Under the pieces are notes generated by a model, which worked only from the letters and a program-made list of their open reading frames with translations, had not been told where the DNA came from and made no database searches. Position numbers and translations under genes: made by a program. This document shows positions 48,988-64,000 of a DNA stretch of 64,000 nucleotides, one piece after another (positions within the stretch are counted from its first letter, which is position 1; every line of letters begins with the position of its first letter). Source of the DNA: Basidiobolus meristosporus CBS 931.73 (Eukaryota; Fungi; Basidiobolomycota); the NCBI GenBank assembly GCA_002104905.1, contig MCFE01000296.1, positions 37,603-101,602 of the forward strand. Reading direction: 5' to 3'.

Positions 48988-50451
48988 ATGACTATTTCAA
49001 ACGAGCTCCGTATTCTTGACACCATTCTTGACAATATCGGCAACACTCCCCTTGTGCGTGTCAATAAGATCGCCAAGGCTGAGGGGTTGGAATGTGAGCT
49101 CCTAGCCAAATGCGAGTATTTCAATGCCGGTGGTTCGGTAAAAGATCGCATTGGAAAACGCATGGTTGAGGAGGCCGAAAAGGCTGGCATTCTCAAACCT
49201 GGGTACACAATCATTGAACCCACTTCCGGTAATACCGGTATCGGTCTTGCTCTTGCCGGTGCTGTCAAGGGATACAGAGTCATCATCACTCTCCCCGAGA
49301 AAATGTCTCAAGAGAAGGTAGATGTTCTGAAGGCCTTGGGCGCTGAGATTATCCGCACCCCAACTGAAGCAGCTTGGGACGCTCCTGAATCTCATATCGG
49401 TGTCGCCAGACGCTTGAACAAGGAAATTCCTAACAGCGTCATCTTGGATCAATACGTTAACGTAAACAACCCTATGGCTCACTACGAGGGTACTGCTGAA
49501 GAGATCCTTCGTGCCTGTGACGGGCAGGTGGATATGATTGTTGCTGGCGCTGGTACTGGTGGTACCATTACTGGTATCGCAAAGAAAATCAAGGAGAGAT
49601 GTCCTAATGTTGAGGTTGTTGGTGTTGACCCCTTCGGTTCTATCCTTGCCCTTCCAGAATCTTTGAACGAAACCGATGTTACTACGTACAAGGTTGAGGG
49701 AATTGGATATGATTTCATTCCTGATGTCCTCCAGCGTCAATATATCGATACATGGGTCAAGAGCAACGATAGGGATTCTTTTATCATGGCTAGGCGTCTT
49801 ATCAGAGAAGAAGGCCTTCTGTGCGGTGGATCATCTGGTACTGCCATGGCAGCTGCAGTCAAGGTTGCCAAAAAACTCAAAGCCGGTCAACGTTGCGTTG
49901 TTATCTTACCAGATTCTGTACGTAATTACATGAGCAAGTTCTTGAATGATGATTGGATGAAAGAGAGTGGTTTCTCCGACTCCACCAGTCAAAAGGAGGA
50001 GCGCCAGCAAACCGAGAAATGGGGTGGTGCTACCATCAAAGACCTCAACCTTCCTGCTGCTATCACTGTGCAACCAAAGACTACTTGCCGTGAGGCCTTG
50101 AGTATTATGGAGAAGAACAGTTTTGATCAGCTCCCCGTGGTTTCCGAAACCCACCGCGTGGTTGGTTTGGTAACTATGGGAAACATCCTGTCGAAAGTTT
50201 GTTCCGGCAAGATTACCGGTGACGCACCGGTAAGCATGGTCATGTTCAAATTCACCACTGTTGGAAAGGACTTCTTCGAGATTTCAGTGAACACACCATT
50301 AGCAGAGATGTCTCGTTTCTTTGAAACCAACTCATCAGCCATCGTCACAGAGAGAACATCTGATGTGGAAAAGGTTTCCACTGCTGAGTTGAAAGTTCTC
50401 CACATAGTGACCAAAGTAGACTTGTTATCCTGGTTAATGAAGCAGTTGTAA
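48988..50451 (+). CDS. CYS4: Cystathionine beta-synthase with C-terminal CBS domains
   Basis: Single 487-aa ORF: [48 protein letters not shown]; lacks the animal N-terminal heme domain, as expected for fungi. Confidence 0.97.
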
Positions 50452-53467: not shown

Positions 53468-55844
53468 TCAAAGGATTGTCTGTTGATCCAACAGAGTCAG
53501 GTTAGGATCGTCTTTACGCTTCCAGGTCTTGATGCTTTCTCCATTCTTCGAGATCTCGATTACACGTGAACGGCGATCCCAGCCCTTGTCGGTACCTCCG
53601 TAGGTACCATAACCTGCACCGCCGCCATAGCAAAGTTGCATGTCCGAGAATGGGAAACAGTAGTCGTTAACATGATCATGGCCAACAATGGTCATTTTGA
53701 CATCGCCCGCTAAAAGCAGCAAATATCTTAGAGAGAATAGCCATAAACCCAGTGATTAAAGCTACCTACATTCATGAAGGGCATCGATCCATGGAGACTG
53801 AACCTTGGAGCTAGAGACCGCTTCTCCCTTTGACCCCACTTGCTTCTCGGGTACCTTAGACACCTCGGCATATTCGGTGGTTGGAATGTGCCAGAATGCA
53901 ATCGCGTTGGGCTTCTGACCTTTCTTGTTCGCGAGTTTCTTGGATACTTCCTTGAACCAGTTGACTTGGTTGTCCTTGATGAAGTCATAGCCGGCTCCAT
54001 TCAGGTTGTAAGCGCCGGAGTCCACAAAGTATAGAGTAAAGGCACTCTTCCCCCTGTGGGATGAATCGTGATGAGCCATGTGACCATTGATCTCGACTGC
54101 ATGGGTGGCACTTACTTGGCGGTGATCTGAGTGAAATAGTTCCCGGAGCCAAACAGGCCATAAGGGCCGTTCTTGCCAAGATTGTACGGAACCGAGAGGG
54201 CAGCCTGAGTGATCTCCAGACGGGAGAGATCAGCTTCGTCATCATGGTTACCATGCACGAAAGCCTAGATTTGCCAGAGACAGAGGTCAGTTAGAAAAAT
54301 GCACGCATGAAGAAACCGGCCCGACTCAGTACCCAAGGAATCTTGTGCTTGGCAGCCAGGCTGGCATATTTCAGTACACTGGCTCTAGGGTCTCGAGAGC
54401 CCATCACATTGTCACCAGTGAAGGCAATCATGTCAGGTTTCTCTGCTAAAATCATTCGCTCAGCAAACTCAAAGGTCTTTAGGTTGGTGCAGTTTCGCCA
54501 CTGGATTTCCTGATGTTAGAATGGATTCCTCAACGAGGCAGCATGCTGCGTATTTACCTCAGCGGTGGATGGGATATTGTAGCACGCGCTTCGGTGGCTA
54601 GTCATATGCAAGTCGGCTAGCTGTAGGATCTTGAACGTTCCATCGCGGTGGAACTTCAACTCGGGTACTTTGGGCAATTCTGACCATTCAACATTAGCTT
54701 GTTGGGATCGCTTGTGGTGATGACGGTAGGGCACTTACGCTTCTCCTTGGACCTGTAGTAGAGATACACTTCGTCAGCCCCAGTACCCACATTAAGATCC
54801 TGTTCTACTTTGGTGTAGCCAAATGGATCCACCAGGTCCTTGCCACTCTCGAAGGTAATGGAGTAGATGGGTTTTCCGGCTCCTTTCTTGAAGAACAGAT
54901 AAACTGGCTGACCCTTGGTTCCGCTGTTCAAATCCGTGGGTATGCGCTCATAGCCTGGGAGAGAGGTGCTGGTGGATGCCTTGATACTGGTGATGTGCTT
55001 TCCCTTGTCCTGCTTGTAGAAGAGGTACACATATTTCCCACCCGCACTGATGTTCAGGTCATGATCCGATCGAATCCAGCCTTCTTTGCCACAGTTGGCC
55101 TGATCGCACGCCTCAACAGTGATGTCGGAAATGGGGACTATATATGGGTCGGCAAACACAGAGTTGCATTTGATATCGTGCGCATCAGATTATTCATGGG
55201 ATGAGTGCCTCTTACCTTCTTTCGTTTTAGGTTCGTAGAAGAGGGATACCTTCTCACCTGTGGTATGCATAGGGTCAGCAGACATACACTCGTCACACTG
55301 GATGCACGATACGTACCGGCTCCTTCATTCAAGTTGAAATCGTACGTGCGATATCCGTCTAAGGCATGTGGTGTAGCCCCGATTTTCACCAACAGATTTT
55401 GGATAGGTGCACCGGCGGCCAGGCCGGTGGTATGCGCAAGATACCGTTTGGGTGCAACCGACCCTTCATTGACGTTGACATCCAACTTTTTGTAGCCACG
55501 AGGAGTCTGGTCCGTGTCCTTCAACAGTTGGATATTGGTCAATGGGAGTTTTCCGGCCTCCTTTCGGTAGTGAAGGTAGATGTACTTGCCACCAGCACCC
55601 TTATTCAGGTCCAGCGGAATACGATGCCATGGTTCGGGAAGTTCGCAATTAGTGGTATCACATGCCTTGAGACTTAGGTCAGTAATAAAGGCACTCTCCT
55701 CCTCCCGGGCGGATTTCCCTAAATGACATGTCAAGCGTTACCAAGCTTGTTGACCGCCTCTGATAGTAGTAACAACGGTCTGAGCATACCGAATACCAAA
55801 GTTGAGATGTTCAAAAGGGCGAGTAGAGCAGTAGCAGTCTTCAT
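53468..55844 (-). CDS. Secreted calcineurin-like metallophosphoesterase (Dcr2/PAP-like) with N-terminal MABP-type repeats; spliced
   Basis: Signal peptide MKTATALLALL; repeated DLNxGxGxxxYLxY; catalytic motifs FKILQLADLH, FTGDNV, GNHD, WHIP, GHDH, CYGGGAGYG. Last host gene before the repeat array. Confidence 0.85.
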
Positions 55845-57080
55845 GGTTACCAGTACCTTGATCTGAGGGAGTCCAGGAGGCTGGCTTATATACTGTACAG
55901 GGCCTCAGGAGCTTTTCATCTCAGCCAATACCTTTGGACACGCGGTTGTTTGTCCTAGAAACCCAAGGCATGAGTTGGCTGCTTGTGGGGCCTTGGTTCA
56001 ACAATGACCATAACTAACTACATGCCCAGTGTCACAGCACATATCGCCTCTTCCGCAACATATGGGATGATTTACACATTCCGCTGTATTCGCCATTAAT
56101 GGACATTTCGAGAGTGGGAATCAGATGGGTGGGTGGCTCAATCTTACTCGCAATCACCAATCATGTTCCTCCTTAGGGCCATGTATATCCTGGTGATGAC
56201 GCTTTGCACGCATCGGTTGCTTGTGCAACAATGAATGGATCATCAGTAACCAACCTTCAAGCTAGTAATCACCACTAGGTACTTGAACATGATAAGCAGT
56301 AACCCTCGTGTACCAGCGACGCATCTCAACACCAAAAGCTGTGTGGAAATCACTTTGAAGATATGACAATGATCTGAAGGCAATCCATCCAACCGGACTC
56401 AATTGATGTTAATCAAGCTTAACCATTCTTTGGATATATGCAGTAATTATGCTGAATGCTCATACTATGTATTTATGGACCAGGCGTTTAATTATAGCTT
56501 GATCCAGCAATACAGCCACGGAGATATTCCAACAGGTAATGAGTAATTCACACTCACTCTACTTTCAATAGAATATAATGCTCAGGAACCATATCTACCA
56601 AGGTTCTTAGATACATTATTGGGAATGATATTCATTTATATATGTAATACATATCAGTTAAATGAATAAATAACTCAAAGTGAGCACTGAGAGCCAATTA
56701 TATGTTAATAAATAGCTTTGTTGTTGGACATCTGAAAACAAAAGAAGAATAGTGAAACTTGTGAGCTCCACTAGAAGACAAAGAAGGGATGCAAAGGCTG
56801 ACTTGGAAACTATCAGAACATGAGAGGAGGGGAATTACACTGAGACTTTCAAGACCATCAATTATACTAAAGGGGAGCTTGGTACTGCAAAAGACAGGAA
56901 AAAACCACAAAGTAATGATACCACACTTGCAAACAATGTATAGGGATAACCAATGGTGAATAGGCTCACTAAATACCCAAAACCTCTTATGTATGTGTTA
57001 AAGACAAAATGACACTTCAGGGTTCCCAGTAAGCTTTTGGGAACTGTCCAAGAGCACTACCAACAAGTGAGAACATAGAG

Positions 57081-57476
57081 TTAGGGTTAGTCAGGGGGAC
57101 AATCATCACCTAAGGGTGAAATCTGTTGTAAAAATTTGTATTTCCACCTAAATATTCACCTAACCTAGTCACTTAGATCATTACCTTCAAATCCTAGAGA
57201 ATACTGACCAAATTCCTTGTTGGGATTTACTTAGAATATTTACCCAGAACATGAAAATTCTCAAAGTTGTCCAAACAGCCCCAAACTTTGCACACATGCT
57301 CTTGAGACCTTCTTTAATTTTTTCTACGTGTTTGTAATGCCAAGACCAGGTAAAAGTATAAATACTACTTTTACATTCAATAAATCATTCAGTGAAAACC
57401 ACATAATCTACTTGTTCTCCAAATCACTTCCAATATCTCCAAGACTCTTACAACAATCCCTCACATTATATTGGAT
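57081..57476 (-). mobile_element. Family C: ~0.4 kb non-coding element with the shared 3' hairpin (putative non-autonomous retroelement)
   Basis: Left end (+) TTAGGGTTAGTCAGGGGG-ACAATCA-TCACC-TAAG-GGTGA-AATC, the same terminal module as families A and B; right end abuts TTAGGG of the next element; no ORF. Single copy in the window. Confidence 0.6.
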
Positions 57477-58006
57477 TTAGGGTTAGGGGGAGGAAAGTCA
57501 CCAAGTGGTGAAATCTTTATTTACTTATGACAAGTATCTAAAGAAGCCAAGTTAATCTGAAGTTATACCTAGAAAGCTAGGTCTGAGAGATATCTTTCTG
57601 GTAAGCCAGGTCTGAGAGTTGAGAACTGAGTAGTACTATATTTCCTAGTTAGCTAGGTCAGAGAGAGGTTTCCTGGAAAGCCAGGCCTGAGAAGTGAGAA
57701 TCTGGATATATCTGAGCTAAGTTATACTGGTTTGCAGTAGCTGAATTGTGGCCAGAATGGCCAGTAGACTGGGGGAACTGAGAGGAATTTCTGGGCAATC
57801 ACTGGCCAAATTTACTAGGCAAATCTGGCCAATTAGCATTTCAAGGATCTCAGCCAATCAGAGCCTTTACTTTGCCCAATGGTTGATCAAGCCATCTCCC
57901 AATGAGCACACATCAATTTATTAATCAAATTTTGCTGAATCCAGGATTTGAACCCACAACCATGGGTATGGAAGGGTTAGGGATAACCACAAGGCTAAGT
58001 GTTCTT
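57477..58006 (-). mobile_element. Family B copy 1: apparently full-length tRNA-headed SINE
   Basis: Minus strand: A box TAGCCTTGTGG, B box GGTTCAAATCC, ~430 nt body, 3' AATAAAGATTTCACC-ACTT-GGTGACTTTCCTCCCCC-TAACCCTAA. About 96% identical (by eye) to 63296-63797. Confidence 0.8.
57944..57997 (-). promoter_or_regulatory. Pol III type-2 internal promoter (A and B boxes) of the SINE head
   Basis: B box = + GGATTTGAACC 57944-57954; A box = + CCACAAGGCTA 57987-57997; 32-nt spacing. The A box has one mismatch to TRGCNNARYGG. Confidence 0.7.
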
Positions 58007-58071
58007 GGTTAGGGGGGAGACAGTCACCAACCGGTGAAATCTTTATTTCAGTTGAAACAAAGAAGCCAGCG

Positions 58072-60840
58072 CTACTGTTGTAGCTTTGATACAAGAGTGT
58101 GTAGCTGAGGGGAATTTGTAGGTAAGTTAATAAGAAGTGATGATAGTTCTTCAGTGCTCAAGACACTGTTCAGTGGGAAGGGGGGTAGCAAGAGAGGTAG
58201 GAATGACTTGTGAACAACATTAATGAGGGGAATGTGATAAGGATTGATATTCATCATAAAGGGAGTGTGCTGCTGCAGATATTGCTGCCAAAGGTCTGTC
58301 AAGTACTTCAGGTAGGCCAGCTTGGGTTTTTCTGACTGCAGAATATAGTGTGCAAACTTCTTGACTTCAGGATCTCCAAGTATAGTTCTCCAGCAGGAGC
58401 CAGGTGTTGTGTGGTGTGTTCTCTTCCAGGCCTTAATCAGTGGATTGTTACAGTTGTGAAGTCTGAGGTATAATCTGGTTCTAAGGTAGAGAAGTCTGAT
58501 CTTATAGGGCATAAACCCAAAAGCACCAAGAATAGCATGTCTGTAGGGGCATTCAGGCAAATGAGGCACCAAGGAGGTAATGCACCATACTGCAAACTTG
58601 TCAAGCTTAGTGCAGTCTCTAGAAGTAAGAGAGAGAAGTGGTAAGCCAAATTCCAGGACAGGGAAGACAAACTGCTTGAGTAAAAGGAGGCAGCTGGGAG
58701 CTGAAGTTGTAGGAGGAGTAACAGCCAGTAGCTTGTGGAGTGCCTGTCTTGCCAGGATGATTCTCTTCTTCAGGTGTGCTCCAGAGTCTAGTCCAGTAGG
58801 AAGGAAAGGAAAGCCAAGATATGTAGCAGAAACCTGAGCAGGTAGAGTGGAGTTCTCCAAGTTGATGGGAGAGCCCAAAGGTACTGTCTTTGCAATGGAA
58901 AGCTGGAGATTATTCTTCTGCAGATACTGGTGGATGGTCTGGGAGTCTTGTTGCACATTGGAGGAGGATATTCTGATGTCATCAGCAAAGAGAGTAACCA
59001 GGCAGTCAGCTGAGAGTCTTGGGAAATCATTCAGGAAGATGGCAAACAGTATAGGACCAAGCACAGAGCCTTGAACCACTCCATTAGGAACTGAGAACAT
59101 AGCTGATTGCTCACTTGGGTGCAGAATTCTTGCTTGTGGATCCAGAAACAGAGACCTGACAAGGAGGGTGAGAGAGGTACTGGAGAAGCATTGCAACTTG
59201 GACCAAAGCAGATTTCTGTCAACTGAATCAAAGGCCTTAGTAATATCAAACAGAACAGAGGGATACTTGCACTGGAGAGAGTGATCTTGGCTAAGTATGA
59301 CTGCATATTCCAAGGAGAGGCCAGGAATAAAGCCTAACTGTGCAGGATGAAACTTGAGGGAGTCAGAGTAGAGCTCCTGAGCAAGCAGAAGCTCAAACAC
59401 CTTTCTGCAGGTGGGTAGCAGAGATATTGGCCTGTAGGAGCTAGGATCCAGGTGCTTTCCTTTACCCTTGTACAGTGGTAGAACATTTGCAAAGGACCAT
59501 TCTTCAGGAGTAGAAAGTTGGGCTGAACATTGCTGAAACAGTGGAAGCAGAAGTGCAGACATGGCCTTGGTACTAGTCTTCAGAAGCTCATAGGAGATTG
59601 TGTCCACACCTGGAGCAGTAGAGTTGGGAAGCCTCTTGAGCACATTATGGATTCTCCTTTGATCAAGTGCAAGTGGGATGGGCAGAGTCTTGAAGTCAGG
59701 ATGAAAGCCAGGAGTTGAGTACTGCTTTGTGGAGAAGAAGATGTTAGCCAGCTGTTCTGTTGAAGGTAACTTCCTGGAAGAGGGCCTCATTGCCCTGTAG
59801 AGTCTTGATACTGTTCTTGTTATAGAGTTGGAAGATTGCAGAGGCAAAGAACTCATAATATGATCCCAGAGCTGAGTATGCAGAGTTTGGTGAATTGCCT
59901 TGGAGTGGTGTATTGCTGTCAGGAGGAGTTTCTCTGTTTTTGGGTTAGGGAAACTCAGGTAGCTTTGTTGCAGGGCTGAAACAATGGATTCCCATTTTCT
60001 TGAGGTAACAGCAGTAGTCTTGCATGGCAGTGAGAGGGAGGCAGACACCAGAATCAGATGCTTCACAAAGAGCCAGGCATAGTTGAGATCATCTGGCAGA
60101 GAAAGTAGCAAACTGGCAAGCTTCAAGTAGTTCCCAAAGTCTTTCTTCTGATTCTTGGTAGCTTTGTGGGTGAGCACAGTAAGCTTTGGCAGCTTCTTCT
60201 TCACAACTGGTTGCATAGAAAGGGACCAGGCTGGGTGGTCAGAGGCTCTCAAGGATCCTAGCTCAGCTCCAGAGAATTGCTTAACTTCATTCACAAAGTA
60301 GAGGGCAGCAGCAGAAGGGCAGATCCAGTCAACACATCTTTTCTCAGATTGAGCACCTAGTGCTAGCAGGTGGCTTTCTCTCAGGAAGTTCAGTAGGAAT
60401 GTAGACCTTGGCTTCATTCTTGCAGTCAGAGTAGTCTTGTTCTCAGGATGGGGAATGTTGAGATCTCCAAGCAAGATAACAGGTGTTGATTTAGATTGTT
60501 GGTATTGCTGAACCTTCTGGCATATAACTTGCACTTCCTGAAGGGCAAGACTTGGAGGCAGATAGCAGAGCACCAGACTGATAGTTGGCAACTGGAGAGC
60601 AGCACAGTAAGGGGAGTAAAGAGGAACACAGAGCTGAGGAGTATTGATGGTAGAAGAGATGAAGCAGATAGAGGAGGTATTCTTTGTTCTAGGAGTAGAA
60701 AAGCAATATAGATTAGTCAAAAGTATAGAGAGTAGCTGTACATCAATCAAACACAGGAGGGAAAATCTTGAAAGAAGTCTCTCTAGAGTTGGTCTTGATG
60801 GCTGTATGCTGTTGCAGTTAAGCAACAGAACTTCAGGTAG
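58072..60840 (-). CDS. LINE ORF2: AP-like endonuclease + reverse transcriptase
   Basis: APE: LLNCNS, CYLPP, ILLGDLN, VDWI, SDH. RT: APGVDTI, YRPISLL, QLGF, DITKAFDSV, GVVQGSVLGPILF, FADD, YLG. Open from 60840, immediately after the ORF1 stop; the first ATG lies downstream of GDLN. Confidence 0.96.
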   Translation of the reverse strand, partial: LPEVLLLNCNSIQPSRPTLERLLSRFSLLCLIDVQLLSILLTNLYCFSTPRTKNTSSICFISSTINTPQLCVPLYSPYCAALQLPTISLVLCYLPPSLALQEVQVICQKVQQYQQSKSTPVILLGDLNIPHPENKTTLTARMKPRSTFLLNFLRESHLLALGAQSEKRCVDWICPSAAALYFVNEVKQFSGAELGSLRASDHPAWSLSMQPVVKKKLPKLTVLTHKATKNQKKDFGNYLKLASLLLSLPDDLNYAWLFVKHLILVSASLSLPCKTTAVTSRKWESIVSALQQSYLSFPNPKTEKLLLTAIHHSKAIHQTLHTQLWDHIMSSLPLQSSNSITRTVSRLYRAMRPSSRKLPSTEQLANIFFSTKQYSTPGFHPDFKTLPIPLALDQRRIHNVLKRLPNSTAPGVDTISYELLKTSTKAMSALLLPLFQQCSAQLSTPEEWSFANVLPLYKGKGKHLDPSSYRPISLLPTCRKVFELLLAQELYSDSLKFHPAQLGFIPGLSLEYAVILSQDHSLQCKYPSVLFDITKAFDSVDRNLLWSKLQCFSSTSLTLLVRSLFLDPQARILHPSEQSAMFSVPNGVVQGSVLGPILFAIFLNDFPRLSADCLVTLFADDIRISSSNVQQDSQTIHQYLQKNNLQLSIAKTVPLGSPINLENSTLPAQVSATYLGFPFLPTGLDSGAHLKKRIILARQALHKLLAVTPPTTSAPSCLLLLKQFVFPVLEFGLPLLSLTSRDCTKLDKFAVWCITSLVPHLPECPYRHAILGAFGFMPYKIRLLYLRTRLYLRLHNCNNPLIKAWKRTHHTTPGSCWRTILGDPEVKKFAHYILQSEKPKLAYLKYLTDLWQQYLQQHTPFMMNINPYHIPLINVVHKSFLPLLLPPFPLNSVLSTEELSSLLINLPTNSPQLHTLVSKLQQ

Positions 60841-61400
60841 TCAGGCAGAGGTTGTAGCTTCTTCAGAGGCAGCATTGATAATGTGACCTGCAGAGTCCCA
60901 GAGCTCTTCAAATGGTGCATCACTTAAGTCAGCAAGGAGGGAAATGGCATGAATCTTGAGGAAGTATGCCACATCATAGGAGGGGGCTTGTCTCTTGATG
61001 GCAGCAAAGAAAGACAGAATGGCAACATGGGCTGGAGGCTTGTTGAACAGTAGAGAGTCAGAGGATTCAGATTCTTCAGGCACTATCTTGAAGTCAGTTT
61101 TCAGCCAGTTAAGGTTCTTCTCCACAAAGGCAACAAATGGGTCAGCAATGTTTTGGTCTAGGATAACCTCCAGAATCTTCCCTTTTCTCCAGGCCAGGTT
61201 GACAATTCTTGAGAGCTGAATATTGCATGCCTTGAGTGCTTTCCTGATGTTGGAAATGGGAGTCCAGGGAACTTGCTTCAAGTACACCACAGTCCAGGTA
61301 GAAGCTGGTGGTAGGTTTGCTGGGGGCTTGTAAGTCCTTCTGTGTTGCAATGGAGCTGCAGTAGTCAGATTGGAGTCCACATTCTCAGTAGAAGGTTTTC
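60841..61400 (-). CDS. LINE ORF1, 5'-truncated (RRM-like segment)
   Basis: Met-free open frame WTVVYLKQVPWTPISNIRKALKACNIQLSRIVNLAWRKGKILEVIL with a beta-alpha-beta-beta-alpha pattern; directly upstream of and in frame with ORF2. Confidence 0.7.
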
Positions 61401-62020
61401 TTAGGGTTAGGGGGGAGACAGTCACCAACCGGTGAAATCTTTATTTCAGTTGAAACAAAGAAGCCAGCACTACTGTTGTAGCTTTGATACAAGAGTGTGT
61501 AGCTGAGGGGAAGTTGTAGGTAAGTTAATAAGAAGTGATGATAGTTCTTCAGTGCTCAAGACACTGTTCAGTGGGAAGGGGGGTAGCAAAAGAGGTAGGA
61601 ATGACTTGTGAACAACATTAATGAGGGGAATGTGATAAGGATTGGTATTCATCATAAAGGGAGTGTGCTGCTGCAGATATTGCTGCCAAAGGTCTGTCAA
61701 GTACTTCAGGTAGGCCAGCTTGGGTTTTTCTGACTGCAGAATAAGTTCAGCAAACTTCTTGACTTCAGGATCTCCAAGTATAGTTCTCCAGCAGGAGCCA
61801 GGTGTTGTGTGGAGTGTTCTCTTCCAGGCCTTAATCAGTGGATTGTTACAGTTGTGAAGTCTGAGGTATAATCTGGTTCTAAGGTAGAGAAGTCTGATCT
61901 TATAGGGCATAAACCCAAAAGCACCAAGAATAGCATGTCTGTAGGGGCATTCAGGCAAATGAGGCACCAAGGAGGTAATGCACCATACTGCAAACTTGTC
62001 AAGCTTAGTGCAGTCTCTAG
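61401..62020 (-). mobile_element. Family A copy 2: 3' ~0.6 kb of the LINE
   Basis: Near-identical to 58009-58623; left end TTAGGGTTAGGGGGG + hairpin; truncated at ...CAGTCTCTAG. Confidence 0.95.
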
Positions 62021-63297
62021 GGGGGGAGACAGTCACCAACAGGTGAAATCTTTATTTCAGTTGAAACAAAGAAGCCAGTGCTACTGTTGTAGCTTTGATA
62101 CAAGAGTGTGTAGCTGAGGGGAATTTGTAGGTAAGTTTACAAGAAGTGATGATAGTTCTTCAGTGCTCAAGACGCTGTTCAGTGGGAAGGGGGGTAGCAA
62201 GAGAGGTAAGAATGACTTGTGAACAACATTAATGAGGGGAATGTGATAAGGATTGATATTCATCATAAAGGGAGTGTGCTGCTGCAGATATTGCTGCCAA
62301 AGGTCTGTCAAGTACTTCAGGTAGGCCAGCTTGGGTTTTTCTGACTGCAGAATATAGTGTGCAAACTTCTTGACTTCAGGATCTCCAAGTATAGTTCTCC
62401 AGCAGGAGCCAGGTGTTGTGTGGTGTGTTCTCTTCCAGGCCTTAATCAGTGGGTTGTTGCAGTTGTGAAGTCTGAGGTATAATCTGGTTCTAAGGTAGAG
62501 AAGTCTGATCTTATAGGGCATAAACCCAAAAGCACCAAGAATAGCATGTCTGTAGGGGCATTCAGGCAAATGAGGCACCAAGGAGGTAATGCACCATACT
62601 GCAAACTTGTCAAGCTTAGTGCAGTCTCTAGAAGTAAGAGAGAGAAGTGGTAAGCCAAATTCCAGGACAGGGAAGACAAACTGCTTGAGTAGAAGGAGGC
62701 AGCTGGGAGCTGAAGTTGTAGGAGGAGTAACAGCCAGTAGCTTGTGGAGTGCCTGTCTTGCCAGGATAATTCTCTTCTTCAGGTGTGCTCCAGAGTCTAG
62801 TCCAGTAGGAAGGAAAGGAAAGCCAAGATATGTAGCAGAAACCTGAGCAGGTAGAGTGGAGTTCTCCAAGTTGATAGGAGAGCCCAAAGGTACTGTCTTT
62901 GCAATGGAAAGCTGAAGATTATTCTTCTGCAGATACTGGTGGATGGTCTGGGAGTCTTGTTGCACATTGGAGGAGGATATTCTGATGTCATCAGCAAAGA
63001 GAGTAACCAGGCAGTCAGCTGAGAGTCTTGGGAAGTCATTCAGGAAGATGGCAAACAGTATAGGACCAAGCACAGAGCCTTGAACCACTCCATTAGGAAC
63101 TGAGAACACAGCTGATTGCTCACTTGGGTGCAGAATTCTTGCTTGTGGATCCAGAAACAGAGACCTGACAAGGAGGGTGAGAGAGGTACTGGAGAAGCAT
63201 TGCAACTTGGACCAAAGCAGATTTCTGTCAACTGAATCAAAGGCCTTAGTAATATCAAACAGAACAGAGGGATACTTGCACTGGAGAGAGTGATCTT
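62018..63297 (-). mobile_element. Family A copy 3: 3' ~1.28 kb of the LINE
   Basis: Near-identical to ~58010-59288; left end TAGGGGGGG + hairpin; truncated inside the RT at ...GTGATCTT. Confidence 0.95.
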
Positions 63298-63797
63298 AGG
63301 GGGGAGGAAAGTCACCAAGTGGTGAAATCTTTATTTACTTATGACAAGTATCTAAAGAAGCCAAGTTAATCTGAAGTAATTCCTAGAAAGCTAGGTCTGA
63401 GAGATATCTTCCTGGTAAGCCAGGTCTGAGAGTTGAGAAGCTGAGTGGTACTGTATTTCCTAGTTAGCTAGGTCTTAGAGAGGTTTCCTGGAAAACCAGG
63501 CCTGAGAAGTGAGAATCTGAATATATCTGAGCTAAGTTATACTGGTTTGCGGTAGCTGAATTGTGGCCGGAATGGCCAGTAGACTGGGGGAACTGAGATG
63601 AATTTCTGGGCGATCACTGGCCAAATTTACTAGGCAAATCTGGCCAATTAGCATTTCAAGGATTTCAGCCAATCAGAGCCTTTACTTTGCCCGATGGTTG
63701 ATCAAGCCATCTCCCAATGAGCACACATCAATTTATTGATCAAATTTTGTTGGATCCAGGATTTGAACCCACAACCATGGGTATGGAAGGGTTAGGG
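63296..63797 (-). mobile_element. Family B copy 2: SINE truncated inside its tRNA head (A box lost)
   Basis: About 96% identical to copy 1; B box at 63759-63769; ends at the SINE's internal GGGTTAGGG (63789-63797). Confidence 0.85.
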
Positions 63798-64000
63798 TAG
63801 GGTTAGGGGGGAGACAGTCACCAACAGGTGAAATCTTTATTTCAGTTGAAACAAAGAAGCCAGCGCTACTGTTGTAGCTTTGATACAAGAGTGTGTAGCT
63901 GAGGGGAATTTGTAGGTAAGTTAATAAGAAGTGATGATAGTTCTTCAGTGCTCAAGACACTGTTCAGTGGAAGGGGGGTAGCAAGAGAGGTAAGAATGAC
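63798..64000 (-). mobile_element. Family A copy 4: 3' end of the LINE, running off the window
   Basis: TAGGGTTAGGGGGG + hairpin + 3' UTR + ORF2 C-terminal codons, near-identical to copy 1. Confidence 0.95.

What the first reader, a model, noticed from the sequence alone, without database searches (positions are those of the whole stretch)
57081..64000. Telomere-type retroelement array: an APE-RT LINE plus two passenger families stacked head-to-tail at TTAGGG junctions
Seen: after the last host gene, seven elements (C, B, A, A, A, B, A) lie in one orientation. Each has its 3' end facing the gene-rich side, joined to TTAGGG units that are G-rich on +, so the 5' ends point outward. Known: this polarity matches terminal attachment where the chromosome G-strand 3' end primes cDNA synthesis, as for Drosophila HeT-A/TART/TAHRE and telomeric Penelope-like Athena/Coprina. 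The fungal telomeric elements I know are RLE-type (MoTeR) or endonuclease-less Penelope-like elements; APE-type telomere specialists are best known from insects (TRAS/SART, TART). Inference: an APE-LINE specialised for fungal telomeres, with its own parasites, possibly contributing to end maintenance.
Basis: partly seen in the sequence, partly recalled or inferred. Interest (0 to 1): 0.95.

Follow-up and report, generated by a model that had tools for sequence, protein, structure and literature searches.

The report
Telomere-tailed LINE/SINE stack at chromosome end
The right end of this fungal contig is a one-way stack of jumping genes that end in the complement of the telomere repeat instead of poly(A); genome-wide they sit only at chromosome tips, which makes this a telomere-specialised retroelement set of a type not yet described in fungi.

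Summary
The array is real, but two details of the observation are wrong. From 57081 to the contig end, six elements and one 37-nt stub lie antisense on +. Each 3' end faces the genes and joins (T)TAGGG.

Corrections:
- "C" is not a passenger. Its body (57124-57455) is a dispersed 332-bp MITE inserted into a telomere-type tail stub.
- B runs to 58008, so the TTAGGG at 57977 is internal to its tRNA-like head.
- The 3.4-kb A is 5'-truncated. Full A is about 4.6 kb, with a 511-aa ORF1 and a 917-aa ORF2 (APE + RT).

Genome-wide:
- A tails number 628 forward and 45 reverse; B tails 391 and 23.
- All 40 long A copies lie within 7.4 kb of a contig end, with the 5' end outward.
- Six of ten sampled contigs end in at least 20 perfect TTAGGG units.
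- Contig C479 (312.6 kb) is telomere-to-telomere with mirror polarity.
- A TERT gene is present.
- Internal junctions hold 1-8 units, usually 1-2.

The most likely mechanism is reverse transcription primed from the G-strand 3' end, which pairs with the RNA's CCCUAA-type tail at short or eroded ends. An APE nick is not excluded.

Known fungal telomere elements (MoTeR, FoTeR, Cnl1) use a REL endonuclease. This is a new variant of a known kind. The scan has already noted the same system on other contigs of this genome.

The parts
57081..57123 (-). Innermost junction: host DNA, then TTAGGG-TTAG, then a ~37-nt stub of a telomere-type 3' tail (G-run, TCACC/GGTGA hairpin, AAATC).
57124..57455 (.). 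332-bp MITE with inverted ends TGTTGTAA...TTACAACA. A dispersed repeat, not a telomeric element.
57477..57488 (+). TTAGGGTTAGGG junction in front of B's tail.
57486..58008 (-). B, a full-length ~523-nt non-coding SINE-like element. It has a Pol III A-box/B-box-like head with an internal CCCTAACCC, and the shared 3' module.
   Evidence: no tRNA call
58009..58014 (+). Single TTAGGG unit joining B's 5' end to A's tail.
58012..61400 (-). A copy 1: the 3' 3.4 kb of a ~4.6-kb LINE, 5'-truncated inside ORF1.
58072..60825 (-). ORF2, 917 aa: N-terminal APE-like nuclease and reverse transcriptase.
60841..61400 (-). C-terminal part of ORF1, the conserved ~170-aa domain. The N-terminal part is lost by truncation.
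61401..61412 (+). TTAGGGTTAGGG junction.
61410..62023 (-). A copy 2: the 3' 0.62 kb.
62021..63297 (-). A copy 3: the 3' 1.28 kb. It joins copy 2 through a TAG overlap only.
63299..63797 (-). B copy 2, cut off at the telomere-like motif inside its head.
63792..63808 (+). Junction TTAGGG-TAGGG-TTAGGG.
63806..64000 (-). A copy 4: the 3' ~0.2 kb, cut by the contig end.

Best explanation
This is the inner part of a chromosome-end array built by telomere-specialised non-LTR retroelements.

What the elements look like:
- Element A is an autonomous LINE. ORF1 has a Zn-ribbon-like motif, a coiled coil and a conserved C-terminal domain. ORF2 has an APE-like nuclease and an RT.
- B is a Pol III-type SINE-like passenger.
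- All families end in one conserved 3' module: TGGCTTCTTT, a stem that includes AAUAAA, a CACC/GGUG hairpin and a C-run. This runs directly into UAACCC units with no poly(A).

Proposed mechanism (inferred):
- The C-rich RNA end pairs with the 3' end of the telomeric G-strand.
- ORF2's RT extends that DNA end. The antisense copy therefore follows TTAGGG on the G-strand, and the 5' end becomes the new terminus.
- Telomerase then caps the new terminus. A TERT gene is present.
- Attachment happens mostly when only 0-8 repeats remain or the end has eroded into the previous element, using 1-4 nt of overlap.

What is shown and what is inferred:
- Shown: location, polarity, tail design, short internal tracts against long terminal tracts, and junction overlaps.
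- Inferred: the pairing and priming step, the timing, and whether the 3'-OH is the natural end or an APE-made nick.
- I put about 0.85 on telomere-repeat-primed reverse transcription in general. I put about 0.5 on the free short or eroded end as the usual primer.
For: Location and polarity:
- All 40 long A copies lie within 7.4 kb of a contig's right end, in + orientation.
- A tails are 628 forward and 45 reverse; B tails are 391 and 23; (TTAGGG)6 is 6728 and 68.
- Every tail on a long contig of known length lies within 18.3 kb of the matching end. Reverse-strand tails sit at left ends.
- Six of ten sampled A-bearing contigs end in 20-37 perfect units within their last 250 bp.
- C479 is telomere-to-telomere, with a full B capped by the terminal tract at each end in mirror polarity.

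Junctions:
- Eighty-nine internal junctions hold 1-8 units, and 67 of them hold 1-2. None is as long as a terminal tract.
- Thirteen of 14 truncated junctions show 1-4 nt of overlap with the telomere phase.
- No B head or A 5'UTR is split at its internal telomere-like motif with the remainder kept. There are 235 normal B heads and 0 split ones.
- The source sample's short-read contigs hold more than 200 different element-to-tail joints.

Element features:
- APE catalytic motifs are conserved across relatives that are 48-63% identical. The N-terminal domain model matches only APE1, L1-EN and R1-EN folds.
- ORF2 is open in 25 of 29 sampled copies.
- Relatives from other samples, 58-63% identical in ORF2, have the same tail and head-to-tail joints.
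- A TERT RBD is present.
Against: - No RNA data are available, so the RNA 3' end and its pairing with the G-strand are inferred.
- The conserved APE motifs argue that nicking is still used.
- Many full-length A copies share one exact 5' end followed by GGTTAGGG in one phase. This fits joining to pre-existing repeats after a nick, or immediate capping, as well as it fits end-priming.
- The four A copies in this window show no age gradient: 98.7, 97.6, 98.8 and 99.2%.
- The metal-binding Glu of the APE is Asp in this family.
- The APE model has low confidence (pLDDT 56).
Confidence: 0.6

Rival explanations
1. Endonuclease-dependent, sequence-specific insertion, as for TRAS1 of Bombyx or Tx1-1_ACar. 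The APE nicks the G-strand inside TTAGGG repeats, the nick primes cDNA synthesis, and the distal repeats stay as the telomere.
For: - The APE catalytic residues are conserved in a family whose members are 48-63% identical, and the domain has an APE-like fold.
- This model gives the same polarity as the one observed.
- Full-length A copies share an exact 5' end joined to repeats in one phase.
Against: - Random nicking of terminal tracts of at least 20-37 units should leave long internal tracts. All 89 internal tracts hold 8 units or fewer, and 67 hold 1-2.
- Some junctions hold no whole unit and the rest of the truncated element is missing, as at 62013-62023.
- None of at least 235 B heads is split at its internal motif.
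Confidence: 0.3
2. Serial template jumping. One priming event at an end is followed by RT jumps from one RNA to the 3' end of the next, either at the first RNA's 5' end or part-way along it. Several stacked elements are then one concatemeric cDNA.
For: - Inter-element tracts are short, at 1-2 units.
- Truncated junctions show 1-4 nt of overlap.
- The window shows no age gradient.
- Full-length 5' ends are exact and are followed by a tail.
Against: - Some junctions hold 4-8 units with variant repeats (CTAGGG, TTTAGGG) that look telomerase-made.
- A MITE has inserted at the base of this array, so the base is older.
- The idea rests on behaviour known for other RTs such as R2, recalled from my own knowledge and not tested here.
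Confidence: 0.15
3. The arrays grow mainly by recombination or break-induced copying between chromosome ends. Retrotransposition would be ancient or rare.
For: - The same B-to-A junction letters recur in the window, L015 and L016.
- Copies are 98-99% alike.
Against: - The source sample holds more than 200 distinct truncation-to-tail joints.
- Neighbours and unit numbers differ from locus to locus.
- ORF2 is open in 25 of 29 copies.
Confidence: 0.1
4. Assembly artefact: a collapsed or chimeric repeat at a contig end.
For: - The contig ends inside a repeat.
- The assembly is oddly oriented, with telomeres almost always at contig right ends.
Against: - The same architecture appears on dozens of contigs and on one telomere-to-telomere contig.
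- It appears in short-read contigs of the source sample.
- It appears in contigs from other samples.
Confidence: 0.02

Closest known systems
TRAS1 / SART1 (R1-clade telomeric-repeat-specific LINEs of Bombyx; PMC7265360, PMC2868851)
   Same: - APE + RT LINE found at telomeric repeats.
- TRAS1 has the same polarity relative to the G-strand (my own knowledge).
- These elements coexist with a telomerase-type repeat.
   Different: - They end in poly(A), and their ORF1 has CCHC knuckles (my own knowledge). Here there is no poly(A) and no CCHC hit.
- Here the junctions hold only 1-2 units.
- The host is a fungus and the repeat is TTAGGG.
- RT clade membership was not tested.
Tx1-1_ACar of the anole lizard (listed in PMC10088271)
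   Same: An APE-type LINE associated with (TTAGGG)n.
   Different: - It is a vertebrate Tx1-clade element.
- I did not compare sequences.
- I know of no reported SINE or ORF1-only partners for it.
MoTeR1/2, FoTeR, Cnl1 (fungal telomeric non-LTR elements; PMC12857005, bioRxiv 10.1101/2021.08.11.455996)
   Same: - Fungal, in head-to-tail arrays at chromosome ends.
- Short telomere tracts lie between copies.
- Non-autonomous partners exist (MoTeR2).
   Different: - Those are CRE-clade elements with a single ORF and a C-terminal REL endonuclease.
- Here there are two ORFs, and the nuclease is an N-terminal APE.
HeT-A / TART / TAHRE of Drosophila (PMC5537684)
   Same: - One-way terminal arrays with 5' ends pointing outward.
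- A mix of autonomous and non-autonomous elements. Family D here encodes only an ORF1-like protein, as HeT-A does.
   Different: - Drosophila lacks telomerase and telomere repeats, and its elements end in oligo(A).
- Here TERT and long terminal TTAGGG tracts are present.
Endonuclease-deficient Penelope-like elements Athena / Coprina (PMC8557442, PMC3846280)
   Same: - Restricted to chromosome termini.
- The 3' end carries the reverse complement of the telomere repeat, proposed to pair with the G-overhang.
   Different: - They have a PLE-type RT and no nuclease.
- Here the RT is LINE-type, nearest to L1 ORF2p among solved structures, and an APE domain is present.
Stringent LINE/SINE pairs such as UnaL2/UnaSINE1 (own knowledge)
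   Same: The LINE and its passengers share a short 3' stem-loop followed by a short repeat tail instead of poly(A).
   Different: - Those insert genome-wide.
- Here the tail repeat is the telomere repeat and the copies are terminal only.

Membership tests
APE-type non-LTR retrotransposon (LINE) | Reverse transcriptase domain of the LINE type | tested here: met
   - Pfam RVT_1, E = 1.5e-24.
- The best solved relatives are L1 ORF2p at E = 3.5e-13, against R2 at 0.06.
APE-type non-LTR retrotransposon (LINE) | N-terminal apurinic/apyrimidinic-like endonuclease with catalytic residues | tested here: met
   - Pfam Exo_endo_phos_2 scores 22 bits, below the cut-off of 27.4.
- The motifs N, Y-PP, GDxN-H, D and SDH align with bona fide APE LINEs. 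The metal-binding Glu is Asp.
- All top 50 Foldseek hits are APE1, L1-EN, R1-EN or ExoIII at about E = 1e-5, from a model with pLDDT 56.
APE-type non-LTR retrotransposon (LINE) | Variable 5' truncation with a common 3' end | tested here: met
APE-type non-LTR retrotransposon (LINE) | Poly(A) or A-rich tail and target-site duplications | tested here: not met
   - No poly(A). Every one of the 89 tails analysed runs into TA-G units.
- Duplications cannot be read in a repeat target.
R1 clade (TRAS/SART) | ORF1 with CCHC zinc knuckles; poly(A); RT groups with R1 | tested here: not met
   - No zf-CCHC hit in ORF1; only coiled-coil noise.
- No poly(A).
- An RT tree against named clades was not possible with these tools.
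CRE clade / REL-endonuclease telomeric elements (MoTeR, FoTeR, Cnl1) | Single ORF with a C-terminal CCHC + PD-(D/E)XK restriction-like endonuclease | tested here: not met
   - Two ORFs, with the nuclease N-terminal and APE-like.
- Features of the REL group are taken from PMC12857005.
Endonuclease-deficient Penelope-like elements | PLE-type RT and absence of any nuclease | tested here: not met
   An APE domain is present and the RT is nearest to L1-type.
Telomere-specific retroelement (functional class) | Copies confined to chromosome ends in one polarity, next to telomere repeats | tested here: met
tRNA-derived SINE (element B) | Internal Pol III A and B boxes near the 5' end | tested here: inconclusive
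   - By eye, TAGCCTTGTGG starts at position +11 (one mismatch to TRGCNNAGTGG) and GGTTCAAATCC at about +53.
- ARAGORN and Rfam call no tRNA.
tRNA-derived SINE (element B) | Non-coding, short, with a 3' end shared with a LINE | tested here: met
   - About 523 nt with no ORF of 80 aa or more.
- The last 40 nt are 85-90% identical to LINE tails.
MITE (body of 'C') | Terminal inverted repeats, short, many dispersed copies in both orientations | tested here: met
   -.
- Target-site duplication unclear: 5 bp in two copies, none obvious in the others.

The most novel reading that the evidence does not exclude
This fungus may run a hybrid telomere. Telomerase would maintain the terminal TTAGGG tract. 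A guild of retroelements would be the routine rescue for ends that become critically short. The guild comprises at least two APE-LINE lineages, an ORF1-only element resembling HeT-A, and a Pol III SINE. All would be recognised through one shared 3' RNA module that ends in the telomere complement. This would be convergent with Drosophila, but with telomerase still present, and would operate at a couple of hundred or more ends of very small chromosomes.
Probability: 0.35. Interest if true: 0.85.

Novelty: new variant of a known kind. Interest (0 to 1): 0.7.

Why it matters
Telomere-targeted retrotransposons are central to ideas on how telomerase and retroelements are related, and on how chromosome ends are healed.

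The fungal examples known so far (MoTeR, FoTeR, Cnl1) use a REL endonuclease. APE-type telomere specialists are known from insects and one lizard.

This system differs in four ways:
- It combines an APE-type LINE with a tail that is the telomere complement instead of poly(A).
- It has a shared structured 3' module.
- It has a SINE-like passenger and, elsewhere in the genome, an ORF1-only passenger.
- It coexists with telomerase.

The system is young and abundant, with at least 670 A tails and ORF2 open in 25 of 29 sampled copies. It sits in a culturable fungus, so the choice between free-end priming and nick priming can be tested directly.

Tried and rejected
- RNA evidence: no RNA run holds the stretch, so expression and the RNA 3' end could not be examined.
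- Read laying: this gave only short contigs of the source sample and two low-depth contigs from another organism. They were useful for the diversity of joints and for nothing else.
- RT clade: none of my searches gave named reference clades. The nearest non-family RTs are arthropod and Mucorales proteins at 30-37% identity. The clade is left open.
- ORF1: there is no Pfam family. The C-terminal domain model (pLDDT 76) has a beta-alpha-beta-beta-alpha core with only weak RRM-like matches, E about 0.1. This is inconclusive.
- tRNA detection in B: negative.
- Covariation in the 3' module: two hairpins are predicted, but only 2 of 15 pairs show compensatory change because the stems are nearly invariant.
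- Age gradient along the window's array: none is detectable.
- 'C' as a telomeric passenger: rejected.
I used short stretches instead.
Full report
**Where the window lies.** The window is G000:C586:37603-101602, and contig C586 is 101,602 bases long. The window's last base is therefore the contig's last base. The assembly has 89.5 Mb in 1366 contigs. A paralogue 80% identical to the element's ORF2 is filed as Basidiobolus meristosporus CBS 931.73, which agrees with the scan's earlier notes. Host genes run up to about 55.7 kb: a PALP+CBS enzyme at 48988-50451, an ion-transport fragment, and a DUF5648 frame at 54656-55734. The array starts at 57081.

**The observation.**
- From 57081 on, the + strand reads host DNA, then G-TTAGGG-TTAG, then a series of antisense elements. 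Each begins with a G-run, a small hairpin (TCACC-N4-6-GGTGA) and AAATCTTTATTT.
- TTAGGGTTAGGG occurs twice against 0.00 expected.
- Eleven of the window's 27 TTAGGG hexamers fall in the last 6.9 kb, all on +.
- Repeat finding and BLAST give the layout stub / B / A(3.4 kb) / A(0.62 kb) / A(1.28 kb) / B / A(0.2 kb, cut by the contig end).

The head-to-tail, one-orientation stack with telomere-unit junctions is therefore real.

**Corrections to the observation.**
1. 'C' is not a telomeric passenger. Its positions 38-369 (window 57124-57455) match a dispersed repeat with 3739 first-look candidates. The copies lie in both orientations and deep inside long contigs, for example C147:31160 of 166 kb. 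Aligned copies share sharp ends with inverted termini TGTTGTAA...TTACAACA and unrelated flanks. This is a MITE. Only the ~37 nt before it are a telomere-type tail.
2. B's true 5' end is at 58008. The letters GGGTTAGGG at 57975-57983 lie inside its head, and the same head recurs 235 times in the genome.
3. The 3.4-kb A is truncated. In more than 20 loci the match continues about 1177 bp to a common 5' end, which reads CTCTTTAAATTAG... in sense.
4. The junction at 62013-62023 has only a TAG overlap.

**Anatomy of A.**
- Full A is about 4.6 kb.
- The 5' UTR carries 1-5 tandem ~100-bp monomers and an internal CAACCCTAACCCTAA.
- ORF1 has 511 aa: a CxxC...CxC motif, a coiled coil, and a C-terminal ~170 aa conserved at 54-66% among related families. 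A model of that domain (pLDDT 76) has a beta-alpha-beta-beta-alpha core plus helices, with only weak RRM-like matches.
- ORF2 has 917 aa.
  - RVT_1 scores E = 1.5e-24.
  - Exo_endo_phos_2 scores 22 bits, below the cut-off.
  - When aligned with ordinary APE LINEs, the family keeps the N, Y-PP, GDxN-H, D and SDH motifs. The metal-binding Glu is Asp in all members that have an N-terminus.
  - A low-confidence model of residues 1-250 (pLDDT 56) still finds only APE1, L1-EN, R1-EN and ExoIII-type chains in its top 50 hits, at about E = 1e-5.
- By sequence, the RT is closest to L1 ORF2p among solved structures, at E = 3.5e-13 against 0.06 for R2.
- Outside its own family, the best database relatives reach only 30-37% identity in the RT. 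The clade is not assigned.
- ORF2 is uninterrupted in 25 of 29 sampled copies, and the copies are 98-99% alike. The family is young.

**The shared 3' module.** Ten tails from at least six families, one of them from another sample, align over about 80 nt. The module reads TGGCTTCTTT, a family-specific stem, AAATAAAGATTTCACC, a loop, GGTGAC, a C-run, then TAACCC. RNAalifold predicts two hairpins, but only 2 of 15 pairs show compensatory change because the stems hardly vary. I treat the structure as predicted, not proven. The module contains AAUAAA about 30 nt from the end. No copy has poly(A).

**Genome-wide test.**
- All 40 long A copies are on + and end within 7.4 kb of their contig's right end, on contigs of up to 280 kb.
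- Exact tail patterns give 628 forward and 45 reverse for A, and 391 and 23 for B. (TTAGGG)6 gives 6728 and 68.
- For every long contig whose length I obtained, + tails lie within 18.3 kb of the right end, and - tails lie at the left end: C80, C291, C416, C479.
- Six of ten sampled A-bearing contigs end in 20-37 perfect TTAGGG units within their last 250 bases. The other four stop inside elements.
- Contig C479 (312,558 bp) starts with at least 23 AACCCT units followed directly by a full-length B head in sense. It ends with a full-length B head in antisense followed by at least 33 TTAGGG units. This is a telomere-to-telomere molecule with mirror polarity.
- A TERT RNA-binding domain is encoded on C935.

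Genes resuming to the right cannot be checked on this contig.

**Mechanism.**
- The antisense copy follows TTAGGG on the G-strand, so a G-strand 3'-OH primed cDNA synthesis on an RNA whose end is the telomere complement.
- The 89 internal junctions hold 1-8 units, and 67 of them hold 1-2. Terminal tracts hold at least 20-37. Random nicking of normal-length tracts would leave long internal tracts, and none is seen.
- Thirteen of 14 interpretable truncated junctions show 1-4 nt that could belong either to the truncated element or to the telomere phase.
- No B head (0 against 235) and no A 5'UTR motif is split with its distal remainder kept.
- The source sample's short-read contigs contain more than 200 different truncation-to-tail joints.

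These results favour attachment to ends that are critically short or already eroded, with everything distal lost. They do not exclude an APE nick in the last few repeats, and the conserved nuclease motifs suggest the nuclease is still used. Serial template jumping would also give short tracts, overlaps and no age gradient, and the window's four A copies show no gradient.

**Relatives elsewhere.** ORF2 relatives at 48-80% identity come from small contigs of other samples. Where the 3' end is present, it has the same module and ends in TAACCCTAA(CC). One contig (L106) shows tail + TAACCCTAA + a truncated element + tail + TAACCC. The design is therefore conserved across diverged lineages.

**Other families in the arrays.** These come from sister loci, not from this window.
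- Lineage E is a second LINE, with ORF2 35-45% identical to A.
- Family D is about 1.4 kb. It has the shared tail, a 196-codon frame homologous only to the ORF1 C-terminal domain, and five to six ~100-bp 5' monomers that each hold CCTAACCC. It is an ORF1-only passenger reminiscent of HeT-A.
- Over the last 40 nt, B's tail is 85% identical to A's and 90% to E's. Which LINE mobilises B is open.

**Literature.**
- Searches for Basidiobolus or Zoopagomycota with telomere and retrotransposon terms, and for a telomeric SINE, found nothing relevant.
- The fungal telomeric elements MoTeR1, FoTeR and Cnl1 group in a REL-endonuclease clade (PMC12857005). Cnl1 forms subtelomeric arrays (bioRxiv 10.1101/2021.08.11.455996).
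- A 2023 survey lists SART/TRAS, GilM/GilT, Zepp1, MoTeR1, Tx1-1_ACar and Athena as the known telomere-associated elements, with only MoTeR1 from fungi (PMC10088271).

**Verdict.**
- This is a new variant of a known kind.
- The scan has reported the same system repeatedly on other contigs of this genome.

Noticed in passing
window 57124-57455; e.g. G000:C147:31160-31491, C605:42735-43067: A 332-bp MITE with inverted ends TGTTGTAA...TTACAACA is very abundant, with 3739 first-look candidates. Copies lie in both orientations and are dispersed through chromosome arms.
   Followed up: partly
G000:C479:1-312558 (L112, L113): This contig runs telomere to telomere in only 312.6 kb, with a full-length B SINE directly under the terminal tract at both ends. 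Together with roughly 200 or more terminal tracts implied by 6728 overlapping (TTAGGG)6 matches, this suggests many very small chromosomes.
   Followed up: partly
whole assembly G000: The contigs are oriented. (TTAGGG)6 occurs 6728 times forward and 68 reverse. Of the 52 contig starts I sampled, only C479 begins with CCCTAA repeats. This is probably an assembler effect, but I have not explained it.
   Followed up: no
L010:140-1500 (G000:C212), also L004, L011, L020: Family D is a ~1.4-kb element with the shared 3' module. It has a frame homologous only to the ORF1 C-terminal domain (35% identity) and 5-6 tandem ~100-bp 5' monomers that each hold CCTAACCC. It is an ORF1-only passenger that resembles HeT-A.
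   Followed up: partly
L006:5900-6075 (A 5' UTR): A's 5' UTR has a variable number (1-5) of ~100-bp tandem monomers and an internal CAACCCTAACCCTAA. B's head holds CCCTAACCC. B copy 2 in the window and a copy in L022 are cut off exactly at that motif.
   Followed up: partly
window 58000-64000: The array's + strand, which is continuous with the telomeric G-strand, has a strong GC skew of +0.22 to +0.29, against about 0 in the host part of the window.
   Followed up: no
protein P0247 (cluster of P0003): A protein at least 90% identical to a telomere-LINE relative is filed in public databases as Bacteroides fragilis 'RNA-directed DNA polymerase, partial'. It probably comes from fungal DNA in a gut-derived assembly.
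   Followed up: no
window 57080-57090: Unique host DNA is joined directly to 1.7 telomere units about 1.3 kb beyond the last host frame, with no subtelomeric repeat zone in between. This looks like an old terminal break that was healed.
   Followed up: no
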